Assembly: GCF_902652985.1 (NCBI RefSeq)
Contig: NC_047028.1
Coordinates: 25,606,001-25,670,000, forward strand
Source of the DNA: Pecten maximus
Taxonomy: Eukaryota
Direction of reading: 5' to 3'
Length of the DNA stretch: 64,000 nucleotides
Below, piece by piece: positions 5,554-23,186 of this stretch. How positions within the stretch are numbered: the first letter of the stretch is position 1; every line of letters starts with the position of its first letter. The notes beneath the pieces are model-generated. The model did no database searches, was not told where the DNA came from, and saw only the letters and a list, made by a program, of their open reading frames with translations. The translations under genes were made by a program, and so were the position numbers.

Positions 5554-7071
5554 AGTTCCGTTTTTCGTCGACACGGATGATTTTTCGCACATTTGGATCG
5601 GATACACTTATGACAGGATGTGCTAATAACAGGATATGCGTTCGGATGTGACGTTTTGAAATAAACATGTCAATTATTAATGAGATGACAGGAAAGCATG
5701 ACTAATTATTCAATTATGTTTTGTGTTGTTGGTTAAACAATCCTCGATAATTCGGTGTTTATCGATTTTTTTCAAACATTTCAGCTGTGACTACATACTT
5801 TGAAACATAAAATATTTACAGTCTGTGTGACATTTCCATCTGATGTTTGTAAACAAAATTGTGGTGTATTAGACGGCATACTACAATTTGCAGTGATTTG
5901 GTTAGTGGAGGAATAAAGCCAAAGTTGTTCCGGGTAAACAAACATGTCGGTCATTTTCTGTATAAATAAAAGGAGCTTTCCGGATGTATTGGCATTTTAG
6001 TTATATGCGCCACTAATAAATAATATATGAATAAATTATATTTATGAATTACGACATTACATTTATTACCAATAACGAGATTGCCACACAATCACCATAT
6101 GTATCTAGATATGAAATTACGAAGTTGGCAATGTCGTCTGCTAACGACGATGATCTGACCGACGAGACATGGAATATGTTTCGAACAACATGTCCTGACG
6201 GGGCAGTTTTTATTAATGAATTCCGAATGTTCCTCTGAAAAGAGCGTAAATCAAACCGATAGAAATTATTTCCATGGAAACACTTTAGCATCTCGATGAA
6301 ATCCACTGAACAATGCCTCATCGCTTCTAACAAAATAAAAGACTGGCTGTTATGGGAATTTAACTTAATGGCGTCTTTGCTATGGCTGGCGGTAAGTTCA
6401 AATGCTTTTTTTTGTTTGTTTTTGATGTAAACATAATCATTGAACTGTTTCCAGATGCTAGAATACATTCGATAGAATGTCACCCGTTATTCGCAGATAT
6501 CTTCTTTCATGGTTTCAAGCTTTAAAGAAAAAATGATGGCATACAATATCGTTAGATAGTTACATTTAACTGATTTAATACAGCTTTGTGGAGAAATTTT
6601 AGCGATCAAACTAAATATAATGTTATGACAGTCATAATACAGTTAGTGGATATATTATATCATACTTATTCGTGTAACGTGTTTCATACACGCTGACTGA
6701 CGTAGATTATTTTTGTATTATGATTACGTTACCAATGTCAAAGTTTATTGAAACATATTCTTAGAGATATTTATGTCTCCGTTTAAAATATATATAGTTT
6801 ACCATGAACCTTGTTCCCTCGTCACGGTTTTGTCCCCTGTAACAGGAAAATTACTTAAGGCCATTAACTTATTTTTTTTCTGTCCATCGGTGTATACATC
6901 ATTGACCTTATTTGTATAAGTGAGGAAGTTATATACAAGGAAGGACAAATTCAAGTACATACTACTTATACTAGGATAATGATTATCACAACACATTTTT
7001 CATGCTTCTTATAGGCCGGTGTCTGTACATTGACGAGTTGCTTTTCTGGTTAGATATTACATTTGGACAAC

Positions 7072-7152
7072 ATGGACGATTTAGTTATCGATGGCATAGG
7101 GACTATTGAAGTTACAACCACAGACATACCTGATGCCCACGAGGATACAATG
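7072..7152 (+). CDS. Alternative (duplicated) first coding exon of the PDZ/beta-trefoil gene, MDDLVIDGIGTIEVTTTDIPDAHEDTM
   Basis: Start context GACAACATGG is identical to that at 10551. Exactly 81 nt, followed by a phase-0 GTAAGT donor. Aligns without gaps to MASFTIAGLDVDDVTTTLIPEAGTDKS (10551-10631). Confidence 0.75.
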
Positions 7153-7473
7153 GTAAGTATATTATATCGTAATTTCTGTTGATACTTGGAATAATTATCG
7201 ACATATAGTCCTTGTTAAGACGAGAAGGTTATCGAATCTGTCTCGGGAGAATTACAAACCAAAGCCTACAAATGTCGTGCATTATACTTTCCTCTGTTCG
7301 GCCTTTAACATGTTGGTAGTCGGTAACGACTGGTTATTCTTTCATCAGTCTCAGATTTGTCGCTCATTTTGCCTGTTGAATATTTTTCTGTACTCAAGTC
7401 GACAATTTAATAAAATATTAGAACAACTGGACCCTGTGTAAATGAAATAATGAGATTGGAGAAAAAATGGTCA

Positions 7474-7593
7474 TCCCCTACCTTGAGGACGTGACAAGAG
7501 AAATCTCTAACCCTCGAGTTGGTTTTCTTGATAGTCTAACCTCGGTTAAACCCGTCGGGTTGAGGTTTCTCTGGCACACCCTCAAAGTAGGGA
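7474..7593. mobile_element. Degenerate palindromic MITE-like element
   Basis: TCCCCTACCTTGAGG...AGAGAAATCTC pairs with GAGGTTTCTCT...CCTCAAAGTAGGGA. Confidence 0.55.
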
Positions 7594-9009
7594 AAGCTTA
7601 AAATGTCAGCACAATGTGATCGGGTGTGGTAGATATATTGGTTGTGTTGTGTATCAGTGTAATTCTGCTATACTAACGCCTGGCAGAGGCCATATCTAAC
7701 AGGGACGTGAAACCCTTAAACCGATTACATCTGTTTATTTTATACTTAGTACTAGATACTGCATTTCCGCCCAGTGCAATACGGCGAATTCACGTGACCA
7801 ATAACAAACTGCCGGACGGAAAATGCATCTCACCATATCAAACCGGCGGTCCAAAAATGCTATCGCAGCTTTCGGAATTCCTCGTGGGTGTTTAGTTAGA
7901 TGACCATAAGGATATCGTCCGAGGTGTTCCGATTTACAACTCAGCAGACGACCACTTCCTTTGTAAACACCAGCCAGAATGTCAGAGGGGGAACGTGTGT
8001 TGAACTCGTTAGCGGGCATCGTGGATATCATGGAGTTGTTTTGAAACCTTATGCGCAAGAGATTAGTTATATTTTTTTTAATAATCTGTTTTCGATGACT
8101 TTAATGTTGACATTACCATTTTTTCTGTTTAACAAAAAATATGTGAAAAAAAGAACGCGCAAAACTAGCAGAAGAGGAGTTTGTATTTGTAACCTTGATT
8201 ATTATACATATTAAATATTTATCACCAACATTTGTAGTTGTTGTTATATTAAAATTTTGAATCAAGCATTCAGTGTAGAAGTCTACGATGAGCAGAATAC
8301 AAACATGGTAAAAATCTAAATCACATGTCATATTAGTCCTCGATCAATATCAGATCTATAAAACATGGTAAAATCTATATCACATATCATGTCAACCCTC
8401 GACTAATATCAGACTCCTGGCTAAAGCCCTATGTCTGATATTGGGTCCTCTGGATTATTTGGCATGTGGTTTATATTTTACCTTGTAATATTCTGTAGGT
8501 ATATCACATTTATGATTTATTATAAACAGCAAAATGGGTTTACGATAAAGCGACACACGAGTTTATACCACAAACATGATAAATATTTGTTTACGGGTTC
8601 TAAAACACTGTTTACCGTCCTGTGGGTGGACGTGACGCGGTAACATATGTATCCCAGTAGGACCTACCGAATGCAATGTTATTGTTTTGCATTGATTTAT
8701 GTATTAACAATTCATGGATGCGAACACTTTTTTTTGTAATTGACATAAAGTCTTAGCTGTATGATATATTGTTAAGCAATACTACGCCTGATCATATTTT
8801 CCAACGGTAATTTTTTTTACAGCTATAGCCGCCAAAGTGATAAATGATAGTTGAGTTATACGTTTGAACAACTATGACATTATATTTTACATATGCTTTG
8901 GTGTTAGTCTAGTAGAACATATCTTAAGCATTTTTGAAAATAGATCGACAAGAACTGGTTGTGGCTTCGATTGAAGGCAGTCGAATCATGTAGAGAAATG
9001 CGTAATGGA

Positions 9010-9115
9010 ATACCGGGAGCAAACATACGTGGTTGGGCAACTGACCCCATATCTTATAACTTCCAATAGGCGAATCGAACCCCGGCCGTTGAGGTGAAAG
9101 ACAATTGTGATAAAA
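9010..9115 (-). mobile_element. Second tRNA-derived SINE family fragment
   Basis: The minus strand reads CAATTGTCTTTCACCTCAACGGCCGGGTTCGATTCGCC (B-box)...GGGGTCAGTTGCCCAACCACG, similar to 15536-15625 (+). Confidence 0.55.
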
Positions 9116-10017
9116 ATGTGTCACCTTGCAACTACCGATAGTCCCATTAAGATCACAAACATTCACAATGCAAGAAATTGAATCAAAAGTTAAGTAGTTC
9201 CTGTGAGCTATTCATCTAATGATTTCAAATTGTCAATGGAATATATAAAAAGTGTAACAACAGGAATAACATTATGAAGAAAATATTAGCAATTAATTAT
9301 TTTTATATTGGATAATTTTAAACGCAGCGATGATATTTTTCAAAACACCCACGTGTATCATAATGATGATTCATACTAAAATAAATGAGTTATAACTAAC
9401 ATTTTAAGCGTTCTAATCAAGTCTATATCATAATAAGATGAGAAAACAGGAAAACACATCTTTTTATCAGAAACTTTTGGACCCGGATGATACTTACATA
9501 ATTATGAGTAACGAATAAAATTGTACGGAAATGAAATCTTAGTTATCTTGTTACATGGTTTTTTACGTGTTCAGTAAAAACAAAGCTTAATATATTTATT
9601 CCTTCGGATTAAATTCCTTTCATTTAGCTGCGGCATTTAATTTAAAGTTAACATTTAATTCTAATTAATTAAAACCTTAACTTTATATATTCAAATTTCT
9701 TAGATTACTGCATTATACTTAATTATATGTTTAGAATATTTTTCGATTAACGTAAATTGTAGATGTCTAATCAGACACATTGAAATGTTATTGTTTTCGT
9801 TCACTTTTCTATTTTTTTTTTCAATTAAAGAGGGAGAAAAAATGAATTGTCATATTTTTGTTTATCCCAATGTGACTTGTAACAGTTATATAAACAGGTA
9901 TAAAATGATAATTTATATTGAAGTGTTTACACTCTTAGCGATGTATCTTGAAATCTGTTAATTATGTTGTTTTTTTTTCTCTTTTTTTTTTTTAAAACTC
10001 GCAAATGGTAAATATCA

Positions 10018-10115
10018 GCATTGAACTGATTTCAGTTCGCAGTTATTGGCTGATAATGCCTTTGTCCAGCTGACATCATCATCCCATAAATACCAACTAA
10101 AAGCAGTTCAATGCT
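10018..10115. mobile_element. Short element with terminal inverted repeats
   Basis: 12-bp inverted termini AGCATTGAACTG ... CAGTTCAATGCT. Confidence 0.5.
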
Positions 10116-10550
10116 TAAATGTTGTATATATGGAATTGCATTATCATATCAAAGTGCCTCGTTGCACTTGATATCAATACGTTTGGCCACACGCAATAAT
10201 AACAAGTCTTTGGAAGCAAATTATCTAAGTACATCTTGAAAAAAATAGCAGTTTGGTGGAGTCTTATAGTCGTTATTCGCCATTTGAATCATAACTCAAT
10301 AAACATTGAATGATATTATTTACTTTTAGAGAATCCTTAACTCATTATGTCAGCGAATGACAATCATTATTGAAAATTTAAATACTATTTTGCTTTATCA
10401 TCATGTGATCGCAATGTTCCCTTAGCTATCCGGCCAGACCACTTTGAGCAAAGTACTCACGCCAAATAAGATGTAGACACGTTTATAACAGCACATCATT
10501 CTAGCAGGTTAGTGTCATCACATATACAAAGTTTAGTTTTGAAAGACAAC

Positions 10551-13500
10551 ATGGCTAGTTTTACCATTGCTGGTTTAGATGTTGACGACGTTACAACTAC
10601 TTTGATACCAGAAGCTGGAACTGACAAATCAGTAAGTACATTAACAGTGAAAAATCAATTATATTTCAACCTTCTTTAACCTTATTTTTGATAAACAGGT
10701 TTCATGATTAATAGTTATTTACAATAACGACATAGCAATGATTGTCTTGTCTTGATTTACATTTAATTGAAAAAAAAATGTAGGTAGATGTCTATTTTGA
10801 TATAGATTCTATACATTTTTTTTCATAATACAAATTAATGTTCACGTCACTATCTTGATATCATGACTGACCTTAACGTACGATATAATGTCTTATCTTG
10901 AGTCAAATGATATATATATGTATCTAAACAGCTGATAGGATATACTTGTTTGAATATAAGTATGTTTAATATTCTAAAATTTGAATTAACCAATATAGAA
11001 AATTTATGATATACTCCTAGAAGGTAAAGAGAACGTGTGCACAGAAAGAGTTTTGCAAGAAGTACTGCGATGGTATCTTGTATACAACTAAAGGCGTGCC
11101 ATTCGTTAGCGTTGACCAATATTATCAAAACAAAATATACGAAATAGATTAAAAGAAAGCAGTTATCTTTCTATATATAATCATATAAATGTACCACTCA
11201 TGATAATTATGAATATCTTTCAATTTTGAAAGTGAAATGCAATGGTGATTTTATAATTTTATTATTTTTGATCAAAATATTCAAATACCTTATCAAATAA
11301 CGGAAACATGTACATGTATTTGTATGTCAGGAGACTCATCAATATACTTCATATACCTAATCGGTTTTATCTAACATACCAGCACACTGATACTATGAGT
11401 ATTACACTCATTTTATATAACACTTCGCCGTAAGTTCAATGTTGTTACATCAATACACTCTGGTTCATTGATTCAGTTCCAATGATATATTTGAATGACG
11501 ATTTCCGTGACAATAGGCGATATCATCAACAAACTGTTTGTCACTGTGAATCATATGTATATAGTATCGTTCTACGCTCATGTTAGCGTATGCCCCAGAA
11601 GTAGTGCGTAAAATTGTACCTGCTTCCCGTTGCATGTTGTAGAAAGGCGTTTGGAATTTTATTTTTTCTCTTCTTTGTAAGCAACTTTCTAATATCTCTC
11701 GTCACTACCTAACGTTNNNNNNNNNNNNNNNNNNNNNNNNNNNNNNNNNNNNNNNNNNNNNNNNNNNNNNNNNNNNNNNNNNNNNNNNNNNNNNNNNNNN
11801 NNNNNNNNNNNNNNNNNNNNNNNNNNNNNNNNNNNNNNNNNNNNNNNNNNNNNNTTGCAGTGAAATAATATTAATGAATTATTATTACATATCTATTTAA
11901 TATATTTACGTCATCTCTGACAAATAAACTAGCCAAGATACCCCACAGCTAGTTTGCCGTTAAAAGAACTGAAGAGAATTTATTGTACTGACAGTACATG
12001 AAATGTCAGATAGATTCTAACAAAACCTGTAATTAAACAGGACTTTTACATTTTTCAACTCCGAAGAGTCAAATCAGCCGACGAAAACCTATCGCGGTCA
12101 ACATACCAGTAATATCATGGTGTATTAATGAATTATTATTACATATCTTCTAAATAATTTTACGTCATCTCTGACAAATAACTAGCAAAGATACCACAGC
12201 TATTTTGCCGTTAAAAGAACTGAAGAATGACAACAGAGCCAGTGATATGTGTTGTTAATGTCATTTATTATTATTAACCAAAATGTACTTCAGATCGATC
12301 ACTAAAGTAACTTAAACAATTGTAAAGGTATAACTCTGTTTAACAATGAGGGAGCGAAACTCTGTATCACGATTGAGTCAGCAAAAGTTACAGTCTGAAT
12401 AGTCACATGGTTGTACCCTTGCCTTGCTATAGAACTGCTTGAATGGATAATATCAACATGACACCATCTCTGTTCTGTGCAAGACATCTATAGTTTTCAA
12501 GAGTACCAACCAAGCTCTCTTAATATCTGCACTTTTAGTTTGTAGCTGTTTTGTTAATTTTTAGATATCCATTACAGACAAGCTGGACTTGTGGCAGTTC
12601 ATTATGATCTTTCTGTTGTCTTTTTGTATCCAAATATTTTCAGATTTATTCGTTTTTCGCAGATATCTTCTTTCAGGAGTTCGGTTTTTCTAAGGTAAGG
12701 GTAAGGTGGAATATTTTCCTATTGAACCTTGTCATTACACAGAAAGATGCTCATAAATATAATTTTCAATCTGACGATCACTGCATTTTTCATTTTTTGC
12801 TTCATTGCGAAATATTTCAATTTCTACTCAAGTTGGACTCAATGAAACTACCAAACTTAATCTGTTTCATTTGCTCATGAATTTGACCAGATTAACACTG
12901 ATCAGTGCTTATGAATACATGGTTAAAATCCTTCCGCGGAACGATTTTACTTTTTCTACATTGTTGTTATAAATAAAATATGGAATAATTATTACAATTT
13001 TCAAATTTATAATGTATTCTTGTATTTTATGAAAGACCAGATATGCTAAATGCTTCTATTTTGACAAAATAATGCTGTTTTTAATCCTAATATTGCGGAC
13101 TATTTTACTCGATCGACTAGACATGCACAATCCGGAACTCCTCGGGCTTTTCCAGATTTGGACTTGCCCAAGCTTCGAGACATTAATATCTAGACCTACT
13201 TTTTTATTCGAAAAAAAAAACCAATTGAAATATAAGGATTGAATCTTGATTTGGTCGATTTCATGGGGTCATGAATTGAGTTGCTTTTGAGACAAATTCT
13301 ACATGAACTGCTTCGCAGTTCATTAAATTTGTCTCAAGAGCAACTCAATTCATGACCCCATGAAATCGACCAAATCAAGATTCAATCCTTAAATAAATCA
13401 TCGACAACTCCTTTCTACATACTAGTCATATCCCCTTGTTAAGTTTTAATTGATTAAACATTGAAGTTGTTAGCAAATATCATCTTTTGTTTGTGGTGGC

Positions 13501-16500
13501 TAAGACGCAATATATATAATAAAACATCTATGTCAGGAAATATCGGTAACCTAGTCACGTGATGTTGTATATACGCAGACTTTACAAGCACGCCACTTGT
13601 ATATACCATGGCAAAATAAACATCACTATCCAACGTGTACACAGTATGGATGTACCAGACGGATTATTTTGTGTCTCGCGTCACACCGCTCATGATGAAA
13701 CTGATATTGGACATATAAAACCATACCATGTAAGTGTTCATAAATATATACTCTTTATGCTTGCACACGTATTACTTTGCTAATGTAAAGTGATGGTAAT
13801 TTTGACAAAGTTTATTTAGATATGTTGATTGCTAACATTTTTTTTCAGAAATAGTGTTTATTCTTTGAAATCTTTCTGTTTTTTCATTTGAATATTGAGA
13901 TTAATAAATTACAATTACAAACACGCCATTTCGATTTTTTTATATCGTTTAATTAGCAAAATATATATATTACATAACACTGAAAATGCATTATCACACA
14001 TATAGATGCAGTCAAACCTGCCTTAGTTGACCACCTGAATTAAGCAACTCCCTCTCAAATGTGACCACATTTTCCCTCTCAATGTTATTTACTATACTAG
14101 TAACCTGATCCTGGATTAAGAGACCATATCTGTCATATATTCCAACTTCAAATGCTTGACTCGCGATCTACGGTTTAAAGTTTAAACTAAACGGACAGTG
14201 CGAAAACGTGGACTTTATAAACATCCACAGGGAAAAAAGAACACAATAATTGATTGTGAAAGAGTTTATTCAAGATGGATACATATGGCACAGCGACAAA
14301 AATACAAGTCATGTGAGAAACATACGGATATAATGGATACTATTTCTTTTATTAATGACTTTAAGATAATTCCCGTAGATAAACTGTATTTTATAGAACA
14401 TATTAGGTTTTAAGTATACGTTAGTAATTTAAAAACTGTGACAAATCACATGTCTTCATCGTTGCCCGCTGATCCTGGACATAATTACGAATGCTCTGAC
14501 AGTGAAAGTTATCATGAGTACTTAAACTTTAAACTATGTTTGAACAACCTGGTATATATATTGCTTGAGATTGTATTTCAGTATCTCCTCAATTCAGACA
14601 TTACAAAACAAATAAACAGACACTGTTAGGCAGTGCAGTCACAAAGGGGAACATGTAACCATAGGGACGTCATCTGAATGTTCAACAATGTACAACAATG
14701 TATATAATAGGCAAAGGGAGCAACATTGACCCGCATTCTGAAAATATATATTTTCGCTTACGTGCTCAATCTTGTGCCTATATAGATGCCAAGTTTCCCT
14801 TTATTTTGTTGTGTATTGACGCTGGAATCCAGACCAGTAAATTGATAAATGTACGCAAAACCGCACCAAAATATGTGTGACCTACTTATTCTTTCGAAAA
14901 ATAAAGTTCAGTAGTTCATGGTTAGAAATTACCAGTGTTTCTACTATCAATTCACCATTGACTGTATATATATAAATTCAGACAAGTATGTTGTGATGTT
15001 ATGATCTTACAGTATGTTTCATCAATATTACATTGAGGAAGTCCTAAGCCGTGTCAGGAAATCATAAAGTACTGTTACTTCCGCAAACAATCAATCGGCT
15101 TTAGGACACCATCCTTTGTGTTGTGTCATCTTTTGTTCCGAGTATTTGACCGATAATATCTGGAAAAACAAACAGTCTAATATTAATAATTTACATAATA
15201 GATTCAGAACGAGTGTTAGGATTACATATCCTTCTCCAGACAACAGACAGCATGCCTTTAATGTGGCGTATCGGCGGGCTGTCACGTGATGTTAGTTTAG
15301 ATACGTCAGACCAGATTACGTTTACTTCCGTTTGGTTTTAAATGAAAAACGTGCATGAACTGTAAGAAGACAGTATTAAAGAAAAAAAATGAATAAATTA
15401 AATAAATAATAAAAAAAAAATGTTTGCCAACTTCATTCGTTTTGCATAATGGTATCTTACTCTTAATTTGTTTTGAAAATTGCTTGTTGACTTTTGCACA
15501 TTGATTTAAAAATGTCAGAACGGGATATGGCAATCAGCTGGCTTCGTGGTAACGCAATTGCCTTTCAACTAGGCGGTCGAAGTTCGATTACCCGAAAAAG
15601 TAATGGGACACCTGCCAAACCATGTTCATGTTAATGTGCATTTGTTGTAAAATGAATAAAGTTTATATTCAAAGGTGCTTCAAATATATGTAAGGATGAG
15701 TTAATATTAATTACTGCTTAGTTGTTGAGATTTATATTTACGTTTAAAATGGATATACGAGGGAAACAAACGCAAGTTGATACTATTGAAATGTACCTGA
15801 TGTTGATCATTGTAGCTTGATTTATATATGTTTACCATAATAGTATACAATGCATGATACAAATCATATAAACACCTACATGAATAATGAATAAAGACAA
15901 TGACATCACTTTATGCCATGTCTGCATTCATATTACAAGGACATTCCCGGATATTGATAAAATACCTGGAAAAAAACAAACAGTAGATTTAGAAATATGT
16001 TATCCGTTTAAAATTCTTTCTTAGATTTTGTCCATTTCATGATTGAATAGCATTGTTTTTTCTTTAAATGACTTGTCGGTAGTTTCTGTTCTGCCTTCTC
16101 TTTTGTTATTTCCTTTTCAATGAACAACATTTCAGACGTGACAGAATCCTACAATATTTTGTAACCAAGGTATGTCCCATATTGATGATGTTACTTAACC
16201 AAGATTTGGCCTATATTTGCATGGAGACTGTAGTCGGAGAAGCAGAAGACGCTATCTCTTCCGGGACAACTGGTCTTCTCCTTTTACGTTTACAAGGATG
16301 TACATTCAAATAGTTACTTTTGTTTGTATTTTGCCGTCTTGTGTCGTTGCTTTGAGCAGGGATAACGACTTTGTTCCAATATCAGTGTTCTCTTATTTTT
16401 TTCTAAGGTGCAACCCGTTGCAGATGCAATCCCCCAACGCTCTGAGCTAAGAGTTAAGCATGCGCAACAGGACCACCCGGAGGGGGATCAGTTAGGAGGA

Positions 16501-19500
16501 GCACTCGTTACATATAAACATGACCAGGGATATTTCATCCATCGATTTGAGGAATTTGGCTTATACAAAAAATCTCTTTTAAGAGACTCTCTTCATTTGA
16601 AGTAAATATAACATTAATAGAATATATATGTATGTATATGAAGTTGGAAGAACTTGTTTTAAATCTAAAGAATTATCAGTATAGCGCGAAAAATGTAGTG
16701 TAAAGTTTGCTATTGCTTTGCCAAATAATAAATAACAATGTTTGAAATCAATATAGCGGCAATAAAAGATGTTATTATTTTCCCGTAATTGTAATCTACA
16801 TTTCGAAACAGTCATGAATGTAATTTATATATATATCTATAACATAATTCCTTAATGATAAAACACCTCTAAACTCTATATACCAATTCATTAAGCATTC
16901 CAAGCAAAGGAGAAGAGTGTGACTTTGTAATTTTTTTTTAACATTACAGGCAAAACGATCAGCTGGTCGAGCTCAATGAACATGATGTGAACACACTAGA
17001 CCACGACACAGCGGTGAAGCTGTTTCTGAACTTAGAAATTGGACAAGATAACACGATTGTAAGCCTTGCTCGAAAAACGTGCATGAAAAACCTTATAGCA
17101 GGTTTATCAATCAAAATCAAGTAATGTCACTAAAACTGTTCTTAAGCTGTTCTATGTAACAATTAATAAGCAGTAAATATTTAAGCCCAGTTGGCAATAG
17201 TCGCAGAAAATCTAATTGCCAATATGGAATAAATATTAGTAAATGTTATTGTCAATGAAGCTGACGACGGTCAAACTCCTGGAACACCTGGTATTTCCCC
17301 CATTAAACTCATTCGGGATCTCCATAAAGATTAATATTTTTTGTCATATTGTGTTCTCATTCTTTTTTAAGAAACAAAGTTAGAAATAAGGGCTTTGTTT
17401 TTATTTCCGTATGCATTGGTTGATTTTTATGAAACTCACAAAAGAAGTATTTCCAAATTCCAACTCGACAGGTATTGTGAATTAGTGATAATAATAAAAC
17501 ACTTGGAATGCAAAATGCCTACGCCGAAGCCTTGTTATGCCATATCACCAGAGCAAATCATTACGTCAAAACAGACCACTCAGTAAGGGTTAATATTTTA
17601 ATATTATTTATGTCTAAATCTTCATCACGATAACAAAGTCACGACTTAGCTATGTTTTTGGCTACCTATAATGTGTCGTAAGTATATATCAAGAACAACA
17701 GAGAAGGACTGTTTCCAGTAAATGTCATTTTATTAAATGACGAATAACATGTCAGCCATGCTGCCTAAACATATTTACAACATAAACAGTATCTTGATAT
17801 TATATACAACATAAACAATACCTTAATATTATATAGCCAAAAAGGTGGAGCACAAAATACGCCACAGGACTGTAATGATGTACGTCATTTCAGGCCCGTG
17901 CCAAATATGATATTGTGTTGTTCATATTTATGAATGTACTACGTCCTCTATGTACGCGTTCCGGTCTAATTTCAACCACCCGGAAAATGTCAATTGATAT
18001 ATATTACCATTTTAAATACAATGCAATTGATACATTTTGATGCATCGGTCGGCATCATGCTAAAGTTTCACGGAAATATATATCGTCCAAAAAGACCCTA
18101 TAATGTCACTGAAAAACTATACAGTTCACATGTAAGTCACTAGGTTCCCTACAGAAGTGTTAACGCAGTTAAAGACAATTTCCTTTTTGTTCTCACGCTT
18201 GAGCTTAAACATCATGTAAATATGTTTTCAGCTGGCTGCCAATTACCAAGTTTCTACAGATTCACTACGGAAAATAACATTCACATTATATGGCTTCACA
18301 ACAGGTAAGTAAAAATACAACGACGACGACGACGTCTGATTTAACGTAGACCATCACACAGTCCCCTTACCTACGCAATCTACATTTTTGTTTATTTTAA
18401 TTTAGTTTTAACACATAAGCCATTGACATTACGTGTGGTTAATTTTCGCGATCGATCCACCCATTTGTAGTTAGAGCTTACTCCAATTGGTATCCAACAA
18501 ATAAGCGTGGGTGAAATTTTCGCGATCAAAAGGACTTGGCGTAAATTTCCCCCTCGCGTAAATTTCTACTTTTACAGTAGATTATAATTTGAACGGTTGT
18601 CCTTTGTCGTACATTGTAAATATAGATATTTATTCTACAGAAAAACCCGAAGAGGAGGAGGAGAAGCCGATGGATATGATACGGGTAGAGAATGTTACAC
18701 TAACGTCAATGCATTTAAGTAGTAAAGCCAAAGATGAGGTGACTATTGCAACAAAGAAGAAGCCACATTTGTACCTAAATAAAGACCTTTCATTTACATC
18801 ACCCGGAATTCCTGAAAAAGATAAAACAGGTAAGATGATCTGTTTGGCGAAAGCTAGGACTAGGTTGGCGTTCTATATTAATGACCTGCTGTATACGTTA
18901 TCATTCTCTTAACGTACGGCGTGATTTATATTGGTAACCGTTAAGGAACAATGTTATATTATCCGTTTTCCGTTTCAATACTTCTCGTATTTCGTGTTTG
19001 TATTAGGATATATTGCTCACGGGTTTTCGTCTGCGCTGGTCTATTTTATCCATTAGTTTGGAGGGGCCGCGATAGCTCAGTCGGTCGGAGTGTCGGCAAT
19101 GTAACCTCAGGTGAGGGGGCCGCGATAGCTCAGTCGGTCGGAGTGTCGGCAATGTAACCTCAGGTGAGGGGGCCGCGATAGCTCAGTCGGTCGGAGTGTC
19201 GGCAATGTAACCTCAGGTGAGGGGGCCGCGATAGCTCAGTCGGTCGGAGTGTCGGCAATGTAACCTCAGGTGAGGGGGCCGCGATAGCTCAGTCGGTCGG
19301 AGTGTCGGCCATGTAACCTCAGGTGAGGGGGCCGCGATAGCTCAGTCGGTCGGAGTGTCGGCAATGTAACCTCAGGTGAGGGGGCCGCGATAGCTCAGTC
19401 GGTCGGAGTGTCGGCCATGTAACCTCAGGTGAGGGGGCCGCGATAGCTCAGTCGGTCGGAGTGTCGGCAATGTAACCTCAGGTGAGGGGGCCGCGATAGC

Positions 19501-22500
19501 TCAGTCGGTCGGAGTGTCGGCAATGTAACCTCAGGTAAGGGGGCCGCGATAGCTCAGTCGGTCGGAGTGTCGGCAATGTAACCTCAGGTGAGGGGGCCGC
19601 GATAGCTAAGTCGGTCGGAGTGTCGGCCATGTAACCTCAGGTGAATGTTCGAGGGCGTGGTTCGACGCTCCTTTCCTGTGTCGGTTTTTATAATTCCCGG
19701 AAAGCTAAAAAAAAAAAAAAAGGGTCGGTCTGGGCTGTCGTTGTTGTGTTCCTGGGCAATACACTTTACCCTAATCGCTCTGGGTGGCATGCGACGGACC
19801 TCGCGTTCAGTGAGGTAGTCACCACCTACTACAATGAGACAACGCCTCAAATGCCCCTGGCTGTTCACGGGGCGATAAACCCAGCATACAAACAAACTTC
19901 ATACCTCATACCTTCAGAGTACAAACTGCCCTGAATAGATAAAACTTTGTTAAGTTTCATAAATATGTTGTCGAACGATCTCCACTTTTCTTAATAATCC
20001 AAAATGTTCATCTTTTCTTAAACGGTGCCTTTTACTTGTGTAATAAATGTCACCAATACATTTTTATTTCCTCTCGCCTTTAGTTTTTGGACTGTTCAAA
20101 AAGGGTTGATAAATTTTCGAAACATTCGGAATTCATTGTCAGGTTCCTGAAATCGAAAATATTGCAATATATATAATATATAGTTTAGGTAGTTGATGAT
20201 ACTCCCACTCTCAGTCACGAATAAGTGTGCAATACATTTTCATATAGTTTTCTTGCTGATATCCACTTCTGAATGTTGCTATAATAGAAGAAGAATATAA
20301 TGCTTTTTCTTAATAATAAACCGTTCCTGTTTATTTTTTCAAGTACATTTCATAAGACATCGCTCGCGGAAGTTTGTTAACATGGCAGTAATTAGAAACA
20401 CAACTTTTCAACGAAAGGATACTGGCTTCCTGGCTGTCGATGAAAGAGAAAATGTGGTACGTATGCGGTATGCAAAATTGTTATTTTATCGTTTGCTTTT
20501 TATAATAGGAAGGGCGATATGAACGAACAATGATTTTATAAAAACAGTTGGCGAGGAAATGGCTAAAATTTCAACAACTTTGCCGATCCAAACCAACTAT
20601 ATATTTTTTAATCAGGAAATATTTTATCCGTGTCAAAATAGGAAACAAAATCTTCTTTGATTATCACATTGTTGATTATTTTGTAACAAGTGCCCGTTTG
20701 TATTTGAAGAATTGCTATATATGCACTACCTCATCAACATCATTAACAGTTTAATATTGCATGTGTACGTCTTGTTTAATTATTCTGGTTACTAGTTACA
20801 CAAGATAGCAAGTAAAGGGTTTAAAAATGTTGATTCTTCTTAGAGAACATCCCGTAGAAATTACCCATTAAACAGCAACATGAACCTCAAAAATATTATC
20901 AAACCTGCTTTTCAATCAATGTAAGTTGTTATATTCTAACAAACAATTTATTCACAAACACTTTTCTTTGATATCTCATAAAATGGTGTAATTTGATGAA
21001 ATCGATCACAGAACAGATAGTATCATCATTTCCCAACTTATTTACAGACGCTGCTGCCCAACTCTCATCCTAATGTGAACTTCGACGCAAGTTTCAACAA
21101 TTGGGGTAATTGGTATATCGAGTCCAAACGCTGTGGTAATTATTGTTTATGATTTATTAACATCGTTTAGCATTTATTAAATCTACTGAAATGTCAAATT
21201 AAAGAAAAAGAAATAAAAAAACAATAAACTACTCGCTAGCGTTCATGAACGAGGGCTTTGACCGGCATATCATAAAGTTTCGAATCTTGTCAAACAATGG
21301 TATACATCGTTATCCGGATAAAGACATTGGCCTCAAACTTTTGTCCCTGTAGTCGGTGCCATAACCTCCATTTTATACATATCGATTGTTTAGAGGAACA
21401 ACATGGGGTGTCTAGAAGTAAAGGGTTGTATTTAAAAATATAGCAATTTTTGGATTTTAATAAATTACAATTACGAGTGAGCTTTTCTTATATAATTTGC
21501 ACTTTATATCAATGGAAATTGTCTAATTCTTTTGAATCGCCAATTATTATAACAGAACTAGACCATTTCAATAGATATAATTTAAATATTCTATAAAAAA
21601 ATTCAATCTTAAATTGGATAAATTTGAGATACACCCCTTTACTTATTTCTCAGAAAAGGAAAATATCAACAAATGTATAACCAACTGTTTCTAAAGGTTT
21701 CTTAAAGAAACTGTCGATAACACCTTGACTTGGAATCATATCAATTGAGCGATCGGGATCAAAGGGGTTTGTGACAGAAATTATATTTCATATCTTCAGT
21801 TTATTTTTGAGTATCATCATTCATTACTGATTATTTTTCGGTGTAATAAACAATATATGGCCCTGGAGGCATGGTAATATGAAAGTTTGTTTACCCTCAG
21901 CTCTCTTATTTCCCTCGGGCAAGCCCTCGGGAAAAATGATACCTTCGGGTAAACAAACCTTCATATTACCCTGCACCCAGGGCCATAAATGCATAATATC
22001 AAGGTTCATTTTTCTAAGTATATGCGTTGGCAGTAGTGTTATTGCAATTTCTCATATAAATGGTTTTAGTTGTACATACATTGAAGGTAGCAAGGGTCAA
22101 ATACTTGAGAAAAACTTTTACAATATCTAACGATCAATAACGTCTAGGTAATAATTGGGTGTTAGAAAGTACATATAAATATAAACGCAAAGGCAAGTTC
22201 CAGAACTCGCAGACTTTAACGTACATATCACTATACGTCTTATTTATAAAACATTATTACGTATTACGATAATTTGTTGCATAATCGAATGATATTGAAT
22301 TTTATTCATCAAAATAATATCTTAATTGACTGTCTGTTTCTTGACATTTTAGATTTATGGCTAATTTTTTTATCACATGTTATGCTATCATCTTAACATG
22401 TCGACGATTACATGACAATAAGTTTAAGATGTCAAATCGACATAAATTATGTCGACAAATGTATATCAATCATAACATGTAGAGGTCCATTGACGTAAAC

Positions 22501-23186
22501 TGGTATTAATCACAAGTAGAGGTCCAATGACTTCTCCGTATTATGTTAATAAATTAATAATCAGAAGCTGTTTCATTGTCTAATATAACACATTACACGC
22601 GTAAGTTTTGCGTCATAACGCGTAAGGTTCGAGTAATAATGTGAAACTTAAGCTATAAATTTTCATTATTTAATCTCTCCAACGGTTCTCCAAAAACGGC
22701 AAAATACAAGATTAGCTTCATTGTCATCAGATAAAATTGAAACTGACGAAAGTCCGCTAAAGATGGTCATGTGACCAATGAAGATAATTGTATGTGCTTC
22801 TTAAATAGTACATATTAATATAAATTCAGTGTCCTTAAACGAAACTTCGTAAAAATGTTTTCAGGAATGTTTCATGTCCTATCTTTTTAATTATGGCACA
22901 TTTCGCGTAGGCAAACAAAAATAAGTAATTCAAATTACAGTATGTTGAATATGCCACTAGCAATGCCCTAGATTGTTATACATTTTTTGTTCACGGTTTG
23001 AACAGAGCAAGAATTATATGACGTTTCTGTACGATAGTATATATATATATATATGAGATATATATAATTTTGTTTGTATTTCTAGGCTGTTTTCTTGCTG
23101 AACGCAACAGAAGGCTGGTTACCATACCAAAAGACATGGATGGTCAGTTTATCATCAAAGCTGTCGACTGCCGGCATTGTCTCTAG
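10551..23186 (+). CDS. PDZ-domain + beta-trefoil (IL-1/FGF-like) protein with no signal peptide, 336 aa, 9 coding exons
   Basis: Exons 10551-10631, 16408-16601, 16950-17058, 18232-18304, 18641-18829, 20344-20456, 20858-20920, 21048-21135, 23086-23186. All are GT-AG with phases 0,2,0,1,1,0,0,1, total 1011 nt, ending TAG. PDZ signature: GYFIHRF...LHLKQNDQLVELNEHDVNTLDHDTAVKLF. Linker EKPEEEEEKP. Three trefoil-like repeats: VTIATKKKPHLYLNKD..HFIRH / TTFQRKDTGFLAVDE..CFSIN / WYIESKRCGCFLAERN..QFIIKA. AATAAA at 23456. The exon model is strong; the fold call is inference. Confidence 0.8.
11717..11854. other. Assembly gap (138 N)
   Basis: Run of N. Confidence 1.
13233..13391. mobile_element. Near-perfect 159-bp palindromic MITE-like element
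   Basis: TAAGGATTGAATCTTGATTTGGTCGATTTCATGGGGTCATGAATTGAGTTGC... is mirrored by ...GCAACTCAATTCATGACCCCATGAAATCGACCAAATCAAGATTCAATCCTTA. Centre TGAACTGC-TTC-GCAGTTCA. Confidence 0.85.
15536..15625 (+). mobile_element. Second tRNA-derived SINE family fragment
   Basis: GTGGTAACGCAATTGCCTTTCAACTAGGCGGTCGAAGTTCGATTACCC..GGGACACCTGCCAAACCATG, similar to 9010-9115 (-). Confidence 0.55.
19063..19644 (+). repeat. 53-bp tandem repeat x11 (SINE head)
   Basis: Unit GGGGGCCGCGATAGCTCAGTCGGTCGGAGTGTCGGCAATGTAACCTCAGGTGA. GATAGCT starts at 19071, 19124, ... 19601 (period 53); copies are near-identical. Confidence 0.97.
19063..19897 (+). mobile_element. tRNA-derived SINE with 5' head tandemly amplified 11 times
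   Basis: A-box TAGCTCAGTCGG in each head unit, then B-box GGTTCGACGCTCC after the last unit. CORE-like GTGTTCCTGGGCAATACACTTTACCC; 3' end CTGGCTGTTCACGGGGCGATAAACCC..CAAACAAAC. Homologous to 5262-5553. Confidence 0.85.
21856..21987. mobile_element. Palindromic MITE-like element
   Basis: TATGGCCCTGG..GGTAATATGAAAGTTTGTTTACCC pairs with GGGTAAACAAACCTTCATATTACC..CCAGGGCCATA; centre CCCTCGGGCAAGCCCTCGGG. Confidence 0.75.

What the first reader, a model, noticed from the sequence alone, without database searches (positions are those of the whole stretch)
7072..10631. Two duplicated, mutually exclusive 27-codon first exons that differ at a putative caspase site
Seen: exon A MDDLVIDGIGTIEVTTTDIPDAHEDTM (7072-7152) and exon B MASFTIAGLDVDDVTTTLIPEAGTDKS (10551-10631). 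They have the same length, the same GACAACATGG start context and the same phase-0 GTAAGT donor, and share M..x.I.G....VTTT.IP[DE]A..D. None of the AGs in the ~50 nt before exon B's ATG gives a phase-0 entry, so A apparently cannot splice into B in frame. Either can join 16408. Exon A has LVID|G, which resembles the FEAD|G caspase-1 site in human pro-IL-1beta (established). Exon B has Ala at that Asp, but carries LDVD further along. The shared exon 2 adds PVAD|A. Inference: alternative promoters make two pro-cytokine isoforms with different proteolytic processing. Protein-level conservation despite DNA divergence suggests both are under selection.
Basis: partly seen in the sequence, partly recalled or inferred. 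Interest (0 to 1): 0.8.

Follow-up and report, generated by a model that had tools for sequence, protein, structure and literature searches.

The report
Alternative start exons of scallop IL-1-like gene
A scallop gene for a probable ancient-type interleukin-1 relative (PDZ domain plus beta-trefoil) can begin its protein with any one of three small alternative exons; two are old duplicates that differ at a conserved Asp/Ala position, the database annotation already holds all three forms, and the proposed link to caspase cutting is untested.

Summary
Exon A (7072-7152) and exon B (10551-10631) are 27-codon ATG-to-GTAAGT units with the same GACAACATGG context. They are true paralogues: similarity sits at codon positions 1 and 2, while position 3 is at chance level.

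The window is Pecten maximus LOC117342090. All three join 16408.

- **RNA evidence:** contigs from three studies show the 7152->16408 junction directly. They also show that A is not a first exon: a non-coding leader (<=6145-6391) splices into 7015. B had no contig cover in the four runs laid, so its use rests on the RefSeq model and on conservation.
- **Conservation:** A-, B- and C-type N-termini recur in Ylistrum balloti. A and C types also occur in Mizuhopecten and Argopecten, where C is an in-frame cassette after A.
- **Protein:** weak but consistent hits suggest a PDZ domain plus a beta-trefoil, the architecture of the IL-1anc family published in 2026. Both structure predictions failed.
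- **Asp/Ala difference:** Asp7-Gly8 is conserved in A types and Ala7-Gly8 in B types. Cleavage there is speculation, and the site is not where IL-1anc or IL-1beta maturation occurs.

The finding is moderately interesting and largely already annotated. Elsewhere in this scan it appears only in first-reader note s1-793012, on this same window.

The parts
6145..6391 (+). Non-coding leader exon. Its 5' end is not defined because the contig starts at 6145. Donor is GCG|GTAAGT. It carries a 35-codon uORF (ATG 6131, stop 6236-6238).
   Evidence: an X2 contig joins 6145-6390/1 to 7014/5 (GT..AG, skipping 623 nt). Sequence.
7015..7152 (+). Exon A. Acceptor is CTTCTTATAG|G at 7013-7014, followed by a 57-nt 5'UTR part. 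CDS 7072-7152 (27 codons) ends at a phase-0 GTAAGT donor. This is RefSeq isoform X2 (XP_033759972.1).
   Evidence: contigs in X2, X11 and X6 cover 7010/7014-7154 and continue with letters equal to 16410-16439.
7750..8045 (+). Alternative exon joined to exon A's donor in one run. It reads Tyr and then a stop, so it is unproductive.
   Evidence: X1 contig, with loose letters equal to the end of exon A; acceptor TACTTAG|T at 7748-7749.
10551..10631 (+). Exon B coding part (27 codons), with the same GACAACATGG context and a phase-0 GTAAGT donor. Its 5' boundary is unknown; candidate acceptors end at 10504 and 10507. This is RefSeq isoform X3 (XP_033759973.1).
   Evidence: No contig cover in four runs.
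11717..11854 (.). Assembly gap or mask (138 N) in the intron between B and C. It was not filled or looked up.
13646..13729 (+). Exon C coding part (28 codons, MDVPDGLFCVSRHTAHDETDIGHIKPYH), with a phase-0 GTAAGT donor. This is RefSeq isoform X1 (XP_033759971.1).
   Evidence: Orthologues in three other scallops have z-scores of 9-10.
16408..16601 (+). Common exon 2. It holds the invariant Asp33 (PVAD|A) and the start of the PDZ-like domain, and ends in phase 2.
   Evidence: The loose-end letters map uniquely to 16410.
16950..17058 (+). Exon 3 (PDZ-like domain, QNDQLVELN...).
18232..18304 (+). Exon 4 (end of the PDZ-like domain and the linker).
18641..18829 (+). Exon 5 (acidic linker and start of the beta-trefoil).
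20344..20456 (+). Exon 6 (beta-trefoil).
21048..21135 (+). Exon 7 (beta-trefoil; holds the NWYIES stretch).
23086..23186 (+). Exon 8 (end of the beta-trefoil, stop TAG at 23184-23186).
6490..6509 (+). One of the only two copies in the genome of the 20-mer TTCGCAGATATCTTCTTTCA. The other copy is at 12656-12675. It lies in the intron after the leader exon.
12656..12675 (+). Second copy of the same 20-mer, about 970 nt upstream of exon C. It is flanked by TTTTCAG| and AAG|GTAAGG, so it could be a mini-exon. This is unexplained.

Best explanation
The stretch is the 5' part of Pecten maximus LOC117342090. This is a single-copy, scallop-restricted gene for a ~315-aa protein without a signal peptide. 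The protein most likely has a divergent PDZ domain followed by a beta-trefoil, which is the 'IL-1anc' architecture. The mRNA carries exactly one of three small ATG-bearing exons: A, B or C. Each ends in a phase-0 GTAAGT donor that splices to the common acceptor at 16408. The three protein isoforms therefore differ only in a 27-28-residue acidic N-terminal extension in front of the PDZ domain. A and B are paralogues from a tandem exon duplication that predates the Pecten-Ylistrum split, and both are kept by purifying selection. C is a third, equally conserved exon with no detectable similarity to A or B. Shown: the sequences, the A-B homology, the A->16408 junction, the leader->A junction, the cross-species conservation, and the single copy of the gene body. 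Inferred: B and C are used in vivo, from RefSeq models in two species plus conservation. Exclusivity in Pecten is enforced by the reading frame, because A spliced into B's or C's best acceptor runs into a stop. The variable N-termini tune regulation, localisation or processing of the protein. The most consistent difference between A and B is Asp7-Gly8 in A types versus Ala7-Gly8 in B types.
For: - **Sequences and context:**
- **Exon map:** RefSeq isoforms X1, X2 and X3 differ only in exon C, A or B and map exon by exon onto the window at 100% identity.
- **A junctions:** spliced contigs from three studies join 7152 to 16408, and one joins 6391 to 7015.
- **A-B homology:** codon-position identity is 18/15/9 of 27, and the shuffle z-scores are 4.8 in Pecten and 7.2 in Ylistrum.
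- **Orthologous N-termini:** A types in four genera, B types in two, and C types in four have z-scores of 9-10. Pecten-Ylistrum identity is 52% for A, 41% for B and 39% for C, against 53% for the gene body.
- **Single-copy body:**
- **Frame analysis of acceptors:**
- **Domains:** PDZ is sub-threshold but consistent in Pfam and PDB. The Fascin beta-trefoil matches 4 of 4 orthologues, with best E 6.7e-4. All 12 PDB profile hits are FGF1, with best E 0.1. The Atlas's nearest clusters are echinoderm PDZ proteins (0.91) and chordate IL-1 PF00340 (0.89) for the whole protein, and ten beta-trefoil families for the C-terminal part alone.
- **Family definition:** IL-1anc, with three Pecten maximus members, is defined in PMC13736523.
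Against: - **Exon B:** no RNA contig covered it in the four runs laid, and no short transcript-derived ORFs were found. Its use rests on annotation and conservation. Exon C lay outside the stretch that was laid.
- **Transcript starts:** it is unknown whether B and C have their own promoters or share A's leader.
- **Exclusivity is not universal:** in Mizuhopecten (X1) and Argopecten the C-type exon is an in-frame cassette after A.
- **Domain calls:** every domain assignment is below the curated thresholds. Pfam IL1 gives no hit. Both AlphaFold2 runs failed, with pLDDT 28.7 and 35.9, and Foldseek found nothing significant.
- **Published list:** I could not check whether this locus is one of the paper's PmaxIL-1.1-1.3, because its Supplementary Table 2 is not held.
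Confidence: 0.75

Rival explanations
1. Separate promoters drive A and B, giving two pro-cytokine isoforms that differ in caspase processing: A is cut at LVID|G and B is not cut there. Both may also be cut at PVAD|A in exon 2.
For: P1 Asp followed by Gly is conserved in all A types: LVID|G, LMTD|G, YEID|G and LEID|G. It is also conserved in all C types: DVPD|G, DMPD|G, DVTD|G and DTTD|G. Both B types have Ala at that place (FTIA-G, FEIA-G). Asp33 in exon 2 is invariant. One sea-urchin IL-1anc is cut by caspases at a DEPD motif. From my own knowledge, human pro-IL-1beta has a second, N-terminal Asp-Gly caspase-1 site. A TATAA-like word lies 63 nt upstream of B's ATG.
Against: There are no cleavage data. 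Cutting after residue 7 would remove only seven residues and leave the PDZ domain attached, unlike the mapped IL-1anc site in the PDZ-trefoil linker. The linker Asp of Pecten is not conserved. The residue after Asp33 is Glu in Mizuhopecten, which I expect to be a poor fit for caspases (own knowledge). A is demonstrably not promoter-proximal, since it is spliced from a leader exon. Short Asp-Gly motifs are common in acidic peptides.
Confidence: 0.13
2. The protein is not a cytokine. It is a cytoplasmic PDZ + fascin/FGF-like beta-trefoil scaffold, and the alternative N-termini set partner binding or localisation rather than maturation.
For: The only family hits for the trefoil are Fascin and FGF1, not IL-1. 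The C-terminal part alone resembles many beta-trefoil families equally. Pfam IL1 gives no hit. In sea-urchin IL-1anc the region upstream of the PDZ domain steers localisation.
Against: PDZ + C-terminal trefoil in under 500 aa without a signal peptide is exactly the published IL-1anc architecture, and bivalves are said to hold several such genes. The whole-protein Atlas search puts IL-1 clusters second and third. I-E-S/I-K-S, with Ile and Ser invariant, sits where the (F/L)ES motif is expected.
Confidence: 0.22
3. Only exon A is functional. B (and perhaps C) are decaying duplicate exons that gene prediction picked up.
For: Only A was seen in RNA contigs. No transcript-derived short ORFs were found.
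Against: B keeps its ATG, its 27-codon length, an open frame and a phase-0 consensus donor. It has a 41%-identical orthologue (z 9.9) predicted independently in Ylistrum, while the gene body is only 53% identical. A-B third positions are randomised while positions 1 and 2 are kept. Contigs drop rare variants, so they cannot show absence (tool note).
Confidence: 0.06
4. The N gap at 11717-11854 hides a second gene body, so that A and B belong to two tandem paralogous genes.
For: The true size of the gap is unknown.
Against: A is spliced directly to 16408 in three studies. RefSeq joins A, B and C to the same exon 2. Neither exon peptides nor a family profile find a second copy of any body exon in the 918-Mb assembly.
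Confidence: 0.02

Closest known systems
IL-1anc family (Fontenla-Iglesias et al., Nat Ecol Evol 2026, PMC13736523): N-terminal PDZ + C-terminal IL-1 beta-trefoil. It has no signal peptide, occurs throughout Eumetazoa, and has three genes in Pecten maximus.
   Same: The size is similar (315 aa). There is no hydrophobic N-terminus. A PDZ-like domain is followed by a beta-trefoil-like domain, and an I-E-S/I-K-S triplet sits where the (F/L)ES motif is expected. The part upstream of the PDZ domain is encoded by a poorly conserved first coding exon. Pfam IL1 does not detect the protein, as the paper reports for invertebrate members.
   Different: Membership could not be confirmed by structure or by accession. 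The paper's text does not describe three conserved alternative N-terminal exons. The one mapped caspase site in that family lies in the PDZ-trefoil linker, not at the extreme N-terminus.
Tandemly duplicated, mutually exclusive exons (general class, e.g. in ion-channel, tropomyosin and Dscam genes; own knowledge).
   Same: A and B have equal length, equal phase and homologous sequence. They have the same donor consensus and share a downstream acceptor. Joint inclusion would break the reading frame.
   Different: Here the duplicated exon carries the start codon and part of the 5'UTR, so the variants are alternative N-termini. The choice may be made by promoter use, by splicing, or by both. C is not detectably homologous, and in two other scallops C is a cassette exon rather than an exclusive one.
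Vertebrate pro-IL-1beta and pro-IL-18 maturation by caspase-1.
   Same: The protein is a leaderless beta-trefoil protein with Asp-(Gly/Ala) motifs in its N-terminal part.
   Different: No cleavage has been shown. The motifs lie before a PDZ domain, not directly before the trefoil. The variable exon is far shorter than a pro-domain.

Membership tests
IL-1anc (PMC13736523) | N-terminal PDZ domain | tested here: inconclusive
   Pfam PF00595 gives E 0.12-0.2, below the 23.2-bit cut-off. A profile against PDB finds five PDZ chains (MAGI-1, MAGI-2, NHERF3, PDZK1) at E 0.08-0.5, all on residues 91-132. The hits are consistent but sub-threshold.
IL-1anc (PMC13736523) | C-terminal IL-1-type beta-trefoil (12 strands) | tested here: inconclusive
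   The Fascin beta-trefoil matches 4 of 4 orthologues, best E 6.7e-4, below cut-off. All 12 PDB hits are FGF1, best E 0.1. The Atlas search of the C-terminal part gives ten out of ten beta-trefoil families at 0.85-0.86. AlphaFold2 failed twice, with pLDDT 28.7 and 35.9. Foldseek found nothing at E <= 1. A trefoil fold is likely, but the IL-1 subtype is not shown.
IL-1anc (PMC13736523) | (F/L)ES motif in beta-strand 9 | tested here: inconclusive
   Residues 277-279 are I-E-S in Pecten and Argopecten and I-K-S in Ylistrum and Mizuhopecten, with Ile277 and Ser279 invariant. The strand number rests on a low-confidence model.
IL-1anc (PMC13736523) | Under 500 aa and no signal peptide | tested here: met
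   The isoforms are 315-316 aa. All three N-termini are acidic and have no hydrophobic run. This was judged by inspection, since no signal-peptide predictor was available.
IL-1anc (PMC13736523) | Listed among PmaxIL-1.1-1.3; conserved intron phases in the trefoil | not testable with these tools
   Supplementary Table 2 and Extended Data Fig. 7 are not held. The intron phases here are 2, 0 and 1 across the PDZ-like domain and linker (after exons 2-4) and 1, 0 and 1 in the trefoil (after exons 5-7).
Pfam IL1 (PF00340) | Match to the IL1 profile | tested here: not met
   There is no hit at E <= 10 in the proteins or in the genome (where the control genomes also gave nothing). The paper says sequence methods miss the invertebrate members.
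Mutually exclusive duplicated exons | Homologous exons of equal length and phase | tested here: met
   This holds for A and B: 81 nt each, phase 0, z 4.8-7.2 and a coding pattern of identity. It does not hold for C against A or B (z <= 2).
Mutually exclusive duplicated exons | Each variant joins the same flanking exon, and the variants do not occur together in a productive mRNA | tested here: inconclusive
   A->16408 is shown by RNA contigs. B->16408 and C->16408 rest only on RefSeq models. A spliced into B's acceptors (exon starts 10505 or 10508) or C's best acceptor (exon start 13645) meets a stop. An open in-frame entry into C exists at 13589, and A+C forms occur in two other scallops.
Caspase-processed pro-cytokine | Cleavage after Asp that frees the trefoil domain | not testable with these tools
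   Only motifs can be read. Asp7-Gly8 is conserved in A and C types, Ala7 in B types, and Asp33 is invariant. Both positions lie upstream of the PDZ domain.

The most novel reading that the evidence does not exclude
Scallops encode, in one IL-1anc gene, a genetically fixed pair of pro-forms. One is cleavable (Asp7-Gly8 in A types; DxxD-Gly in C types) and one is non-cleavable (Ala7-Gly8 in B types). The cell chooses between them by exon choice, so splicing or promoter use would decide whether this ancient IL-1 relative can be trimmed or activated by caspases during infection.
Probability: 0.12. Interest if true: 0.75.

Novelty: new member of a known kind. Interest (0 to 1): 0.4.

Why it matters
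If this locus really is an IL-1anc gene, it shows that an invertebrate IL-1 relative diversifies the stretch in front of its PDZ domain through conserved alternative exons. In sea urchins that same stretch steers localisation. The natural Asp/Ala pair is a ready-made experiment for asking whether N-terminal processing matters in ancestral IL-1 biology. On present evidence, however, this is an ordinary case of alternative 5' coding exons. RefSeq already lists all three forms, and the gene family was described in 2026.

Tried and rejected
- **Exon-by-exon searches:** I searched my own exon calls one at a time (Pfam; whole-library phmmer with exon 5; own-genome searches). The full-length sequences used afterwards are database proteins returned by the tools.
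- **My first exon model was wrong in three places:** I missed exons 4 and 7, considered a wrong donor for exon 3, and read exon 8 in the wrong frame. The RefSeq proteins corrected this.
- **Second gene body:** none was found in the window or the genome.
- **Larger duplication unit around A, B and C:** no colinear intron similarity appeared beyond the exon and about 10 nt either side. The upstream similarity in the MAFFT alignment is not supported by BLAST.
- **C as a diverged copy of A or B:** not significant.
- **Structure:** the full-length and the trefoil-only AlphaFold2 runs both failed. Foldseek on the poor model gave nothing usable, and the IL-33 chains at E 1.7-4.5 are not evidence.
- **Pfam IL1 in the genome:** nothing, and the control genomes were also silent.
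- **Short transcript-derived ORFs that would show B+exon 2:** none.
- **N gap:** not filled or looked up.

Full report
**Observation**

The two mini-ORFs are exactly as described. Window 7072-7152 translates to MDDLVIDGIGTIEVTTTDIPDAHEDTM, and 10551-10631 to MASFTIAGLDVDDVTTTLIPEAGTDKS. Both are preceded by GACAACATGG and followed in phase 0 by GTAAGT. Among 49 ATG-to-consensus-donor mini-ORFs on both strands of the window, these are the only two of 81 nt. Their 11/27 identity stands far above the next equal-length pair, which shares 10%. BLASTP gives E 1e-4 for the pair, and a shuffle test gives z 4.8.

At the DNA level 42 of 81 positions agree, split 18, 15 and 9 of 27 over codon positions 1, 2 and 3. 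Positions 1 and 2 lie far above the compositional expectation (p 3e-7), while position 3 is at chance (p 0.32). That is the signature of an old duplication kept as coding sequence.

**What the locus is**

The assembly has 918,306,378 bases in 3,983 contigs. A whole-library phmmer search with one exon peptide returned a 322-aa scallop transcript product, P0004. With that database protein I retrieved the family.

The family includes Pecten maximus LOC117342090, an 'uncharacterized protein' with isoforms X1 (XP_033759971.1), X2 (XP_033759972.1) and X3 (XP_033759973.1). These map back onto the window exon by exon at 100% identity.

All three continue into the same exons:

| Exon | Window coordinates |
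|---|---|
| 2 | 16408-16601 |
| 3 | 16950-17058 |
| 4 | 18232-18304 |
| 5 | 18641-18829 |
| 6 | 20344-20456 |
| 7 | 21048-21135 |
| 8 | 23086-23186 |

With an 81-nt first coding exon these add up to 948 nt, or 315 codons plus the stop.

**RNA evidence**

I could lay reads once, on at most 6,000 letters, and chose 5800-11700 so that A and B were both covered.

- **A joins exon 2.** In three runs from three studies, contigs cover 7010/7014-7154 and then continue with GCAACCCGTTGCAGATGCAATCCCCCAACG. That string occurs once in the window, at 16410. The two-letter overlap arises because exon 2 itself begins with GT. The junction 7152->16408 is therefore shown directly.
- **A is not a first exon.** One of these contigs also joins 6145-6391 to 7015 across a GT..AG intron. 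A non-coding leader exon with a GTAAGT donor precedes A, so the promoter of the A form lies at or before 6145.
- **An unproductive form exists.** A fourth run holds a contig that joins A's donor to an acceptor at 7750 (7750-8045). It reads Tyr and then a stop.
- **B was not seen.** Exon B had no contig cover in any of the four runs. The tool warns that contigs drop rare variants, so this does not show absence, but I have no direct RNA evidence for B.
- **C was not covered.** Exon C and 16408 lay outside the stretch that was laid.

A search for short transcript-derived ORFs that contain exon 2 found none.

**Conservation**

Ylistrum balloti LOC132553698 has three isoforms with the same layout:

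| Type | Ylistrum N-terminus |
|---|---|
| A | MCDLMTDGIGASEVITADIPDTSSAIN |
| B | MAEFEIAGLGVHENRTVFIPDTSNETL |
| C | MDMPDGLYGGARCSGYDTVDAKYKLYQ |

Mizuhopecten yessoensis LOC110440943 has an A-type start (MDDYEIDGVGVSETSTTEVEVANGNEA). In its isoform X1, a C-type segment follows as an in-frame 33-residue cassette after A. The Argopecten irradians model likewise runs from an A-type start into an extended C-type exon.

Shuffle z-scores are 9-10 for each orthologous set and 4.8-7.2 for A against B within a species. They are at most 2 for C against A or B. Between Pecten and Ylistrum, identity is 14/27 for A, 11/27 for B and 11/28 for C, against 152/288 for the rest of the protein. The small exons therefore evolve at roughly the rate of the body, not neutrally.

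The A/B duplication predates the split of Pecten and Ylistrum. The strict 'one of three' rule holds for the Pecten and Ylistrum models but is not universal in scallops.

**No hidden paralogue**

Exon peptides and a family profile find every body exon once in the genome, and only at this locus. A splices across the gap region straight to 16408. I did not try to fill the N run at 11717-11854.

**How exclusivity may work**

In Pecten, reading from A's frame into the candidate acceptors before B (exon starts 10505 or 10508), or into the best acceptor before C (exon start 13645), meets a stop within 16-18 codons. Double inclusion would therefore give a truncated, probably unstable message. One open in-frame entry into C exists at 13589, behind a poor pyrimidine tract.

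Beyond the exon and about ten flanking bases there is no colinear similarity between the A, B and C neighbourhoods. No docking or selector arrangement is evident. Whether exon choice is made by promoters, by splicing from the shared leader, or by both remains open.

**What the protein is**

No curated threshold is reached, but the weak hits agree with one another.

- **Residues ~35-150:** PDZ in Pfam (E 0.12-0.2) and in PDB chains of MAGI-1, MAGI-2, NHERF3 and PDZK1 (E 0.08-0.5).
- **Residues ~160-315:** the Fascin beta-trefoil matches all four orthologues (best E 6.7e-4), and all twelve PDB hits are FGF1 (best E 0.1).
- **Protein-language-model Atlas:** for the whole protein it places an echinoderm 'PDZ domain-containing protein' cluster first (0.91) and two chordate IL-1 clusters next (0.89). 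For the C-terminal part alone all ten best named clusters are beta-trefoil families. The tool calls scores under 0.9 leads only.
- **Failed tests:** both AlphaFold2 runs failed (pLDDT 28.7 and 35.9). Foldseek on the poor model found nothing at E <= 1.

The architecture matches a family published in September 2026. That family, IL-1anc, has an N-terminal PDZ domain plus a C-terminal IL-1 trefoil, no signal peptide, and an (F/L)ES motif in strand 9. It is found throughout Eumetazoa and has three members in Pecten maximus (PMC13736523). In the scallop proteins I-E-S or I-K-S, with Ile and Ser invariant, sits at 277-279. The paper's accession table is not held, so I cannot say whether this locus is PmaxIL-1.2 or 1.3. 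PmaxIL-1.1 has its trefoil at residues 126-290, which does not fit. I rate IL-1anc membership at about 0.7.

**The caspase idea**

| Type | Pecten | Ylistrum | Mizuhopecten | Argopecten |
|---|---|---|---|---|
| A | LVID-G | LMTD-G | YEID-G | LEID-G |
| B | FTIA-G | FEIA-G | not annotated | not annotated |
| C | DVPD-G | DMPD-G | DTTD-G | DVTD-G |

Asp33 in the shared exon 2 is invariant: PVAD-A in Pecten, PGTD-G in Ylistrum, SAVD-E in Mizuhopecten and VVED-G in Argopecten. These are caspase-like motifs, and one sea-urchin IL-1anc is cut by human caspase-1 and a sea-urchin caspase at a DEPD motif.

Several points weigh against the idea. That mapped site lies in the PDZ-trefoil linker and frees the trefoil. 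The scallop motifs lie before the PDZ domain, and cutting at residue 7 would remove only seven residues. The linker Asp of Pecten is not conserved. Nothing here tests cleavage.

The same paper shows that the region upstream of the PDZ domain can steer localisation in sea-urchin proteins. The scallop N-termini are acidic and carry no basic cluster. I therefore treat differential processing as an open hypothesis, at about 0.1-0.15, and not as the explanation.

**Verdict**

RefSeq already lists the three isoforms and the gene family was described in 2026, so the new elements are modest. They are that A and B are ancient paralogous exons, that an Asp/Ala switch is fixed between them, and that exon C changes between alternative start exon and cassette among scallops. 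Elsewhere in this scan the locus appears only in first-reader note s1-793012, on this same window.

Noticed in passing
window 6490-6509 and 12656-12675: The 20-mer TTCGCAGATATCTTCTTTCA occurs exactly twice in the 918-Mb genome. Both copies are on the + strand in this gene's 5' region: one about 100 nt after the leader exon's donor, the other about 970 nt before exon C. The second copy is flanked by TTTTCAG| and AAG|GTAAGG and could be a ~50-nt mini-exon (12644-12693). Its function is unknown.
   Followed up: partly
window 7750-8045: In one run, exon A's donor is spliced to an acceptor at 7750. The reading frame stops after one codon, so this is an unproductive or alternative 3' form.
   Followed up: partly
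window 13230-13394: A near-perfect inverted repeat (69-nt arms, 97% complementary, 27-nt loop) lies about 250 nt upstream of exon C. It may be a MITE-like insertion or a strong RNA hairpin in the intron.
   Followed up: no
window 11869-12226: A tandem duplication of about 254 nt (92-97% identity) lies directly after the N gap.
   Followed up: no
window 6131-6238: The leader exon region carries a 35-codon upstream ORF (MSSANDDDLTDETW...). Its ATG lies 14 nt before the first base covered by the RNA contig.
   Followed up: no
window 8657-8710 and 10093-10122: Short pieces match RNA contigs that run on into unrelated sequence on both sides, or match high-depth 31-mers. They are probably fragments of dispersed repeats inside the A-B intron. 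The matching contigs of three runs carry an extra T after 8671.
   Followed up: no
P0013/P0014 (Mizuhopecten yessoensis) and P0006 (Argopecten irradians): In these scallops the C-type segment lacks its own use as a start and is included in frame after the A-type exon. The same exon is therefore a cassette in some species and an alternative start exon in Pecten and Ylistrum.
   Followed up: partly
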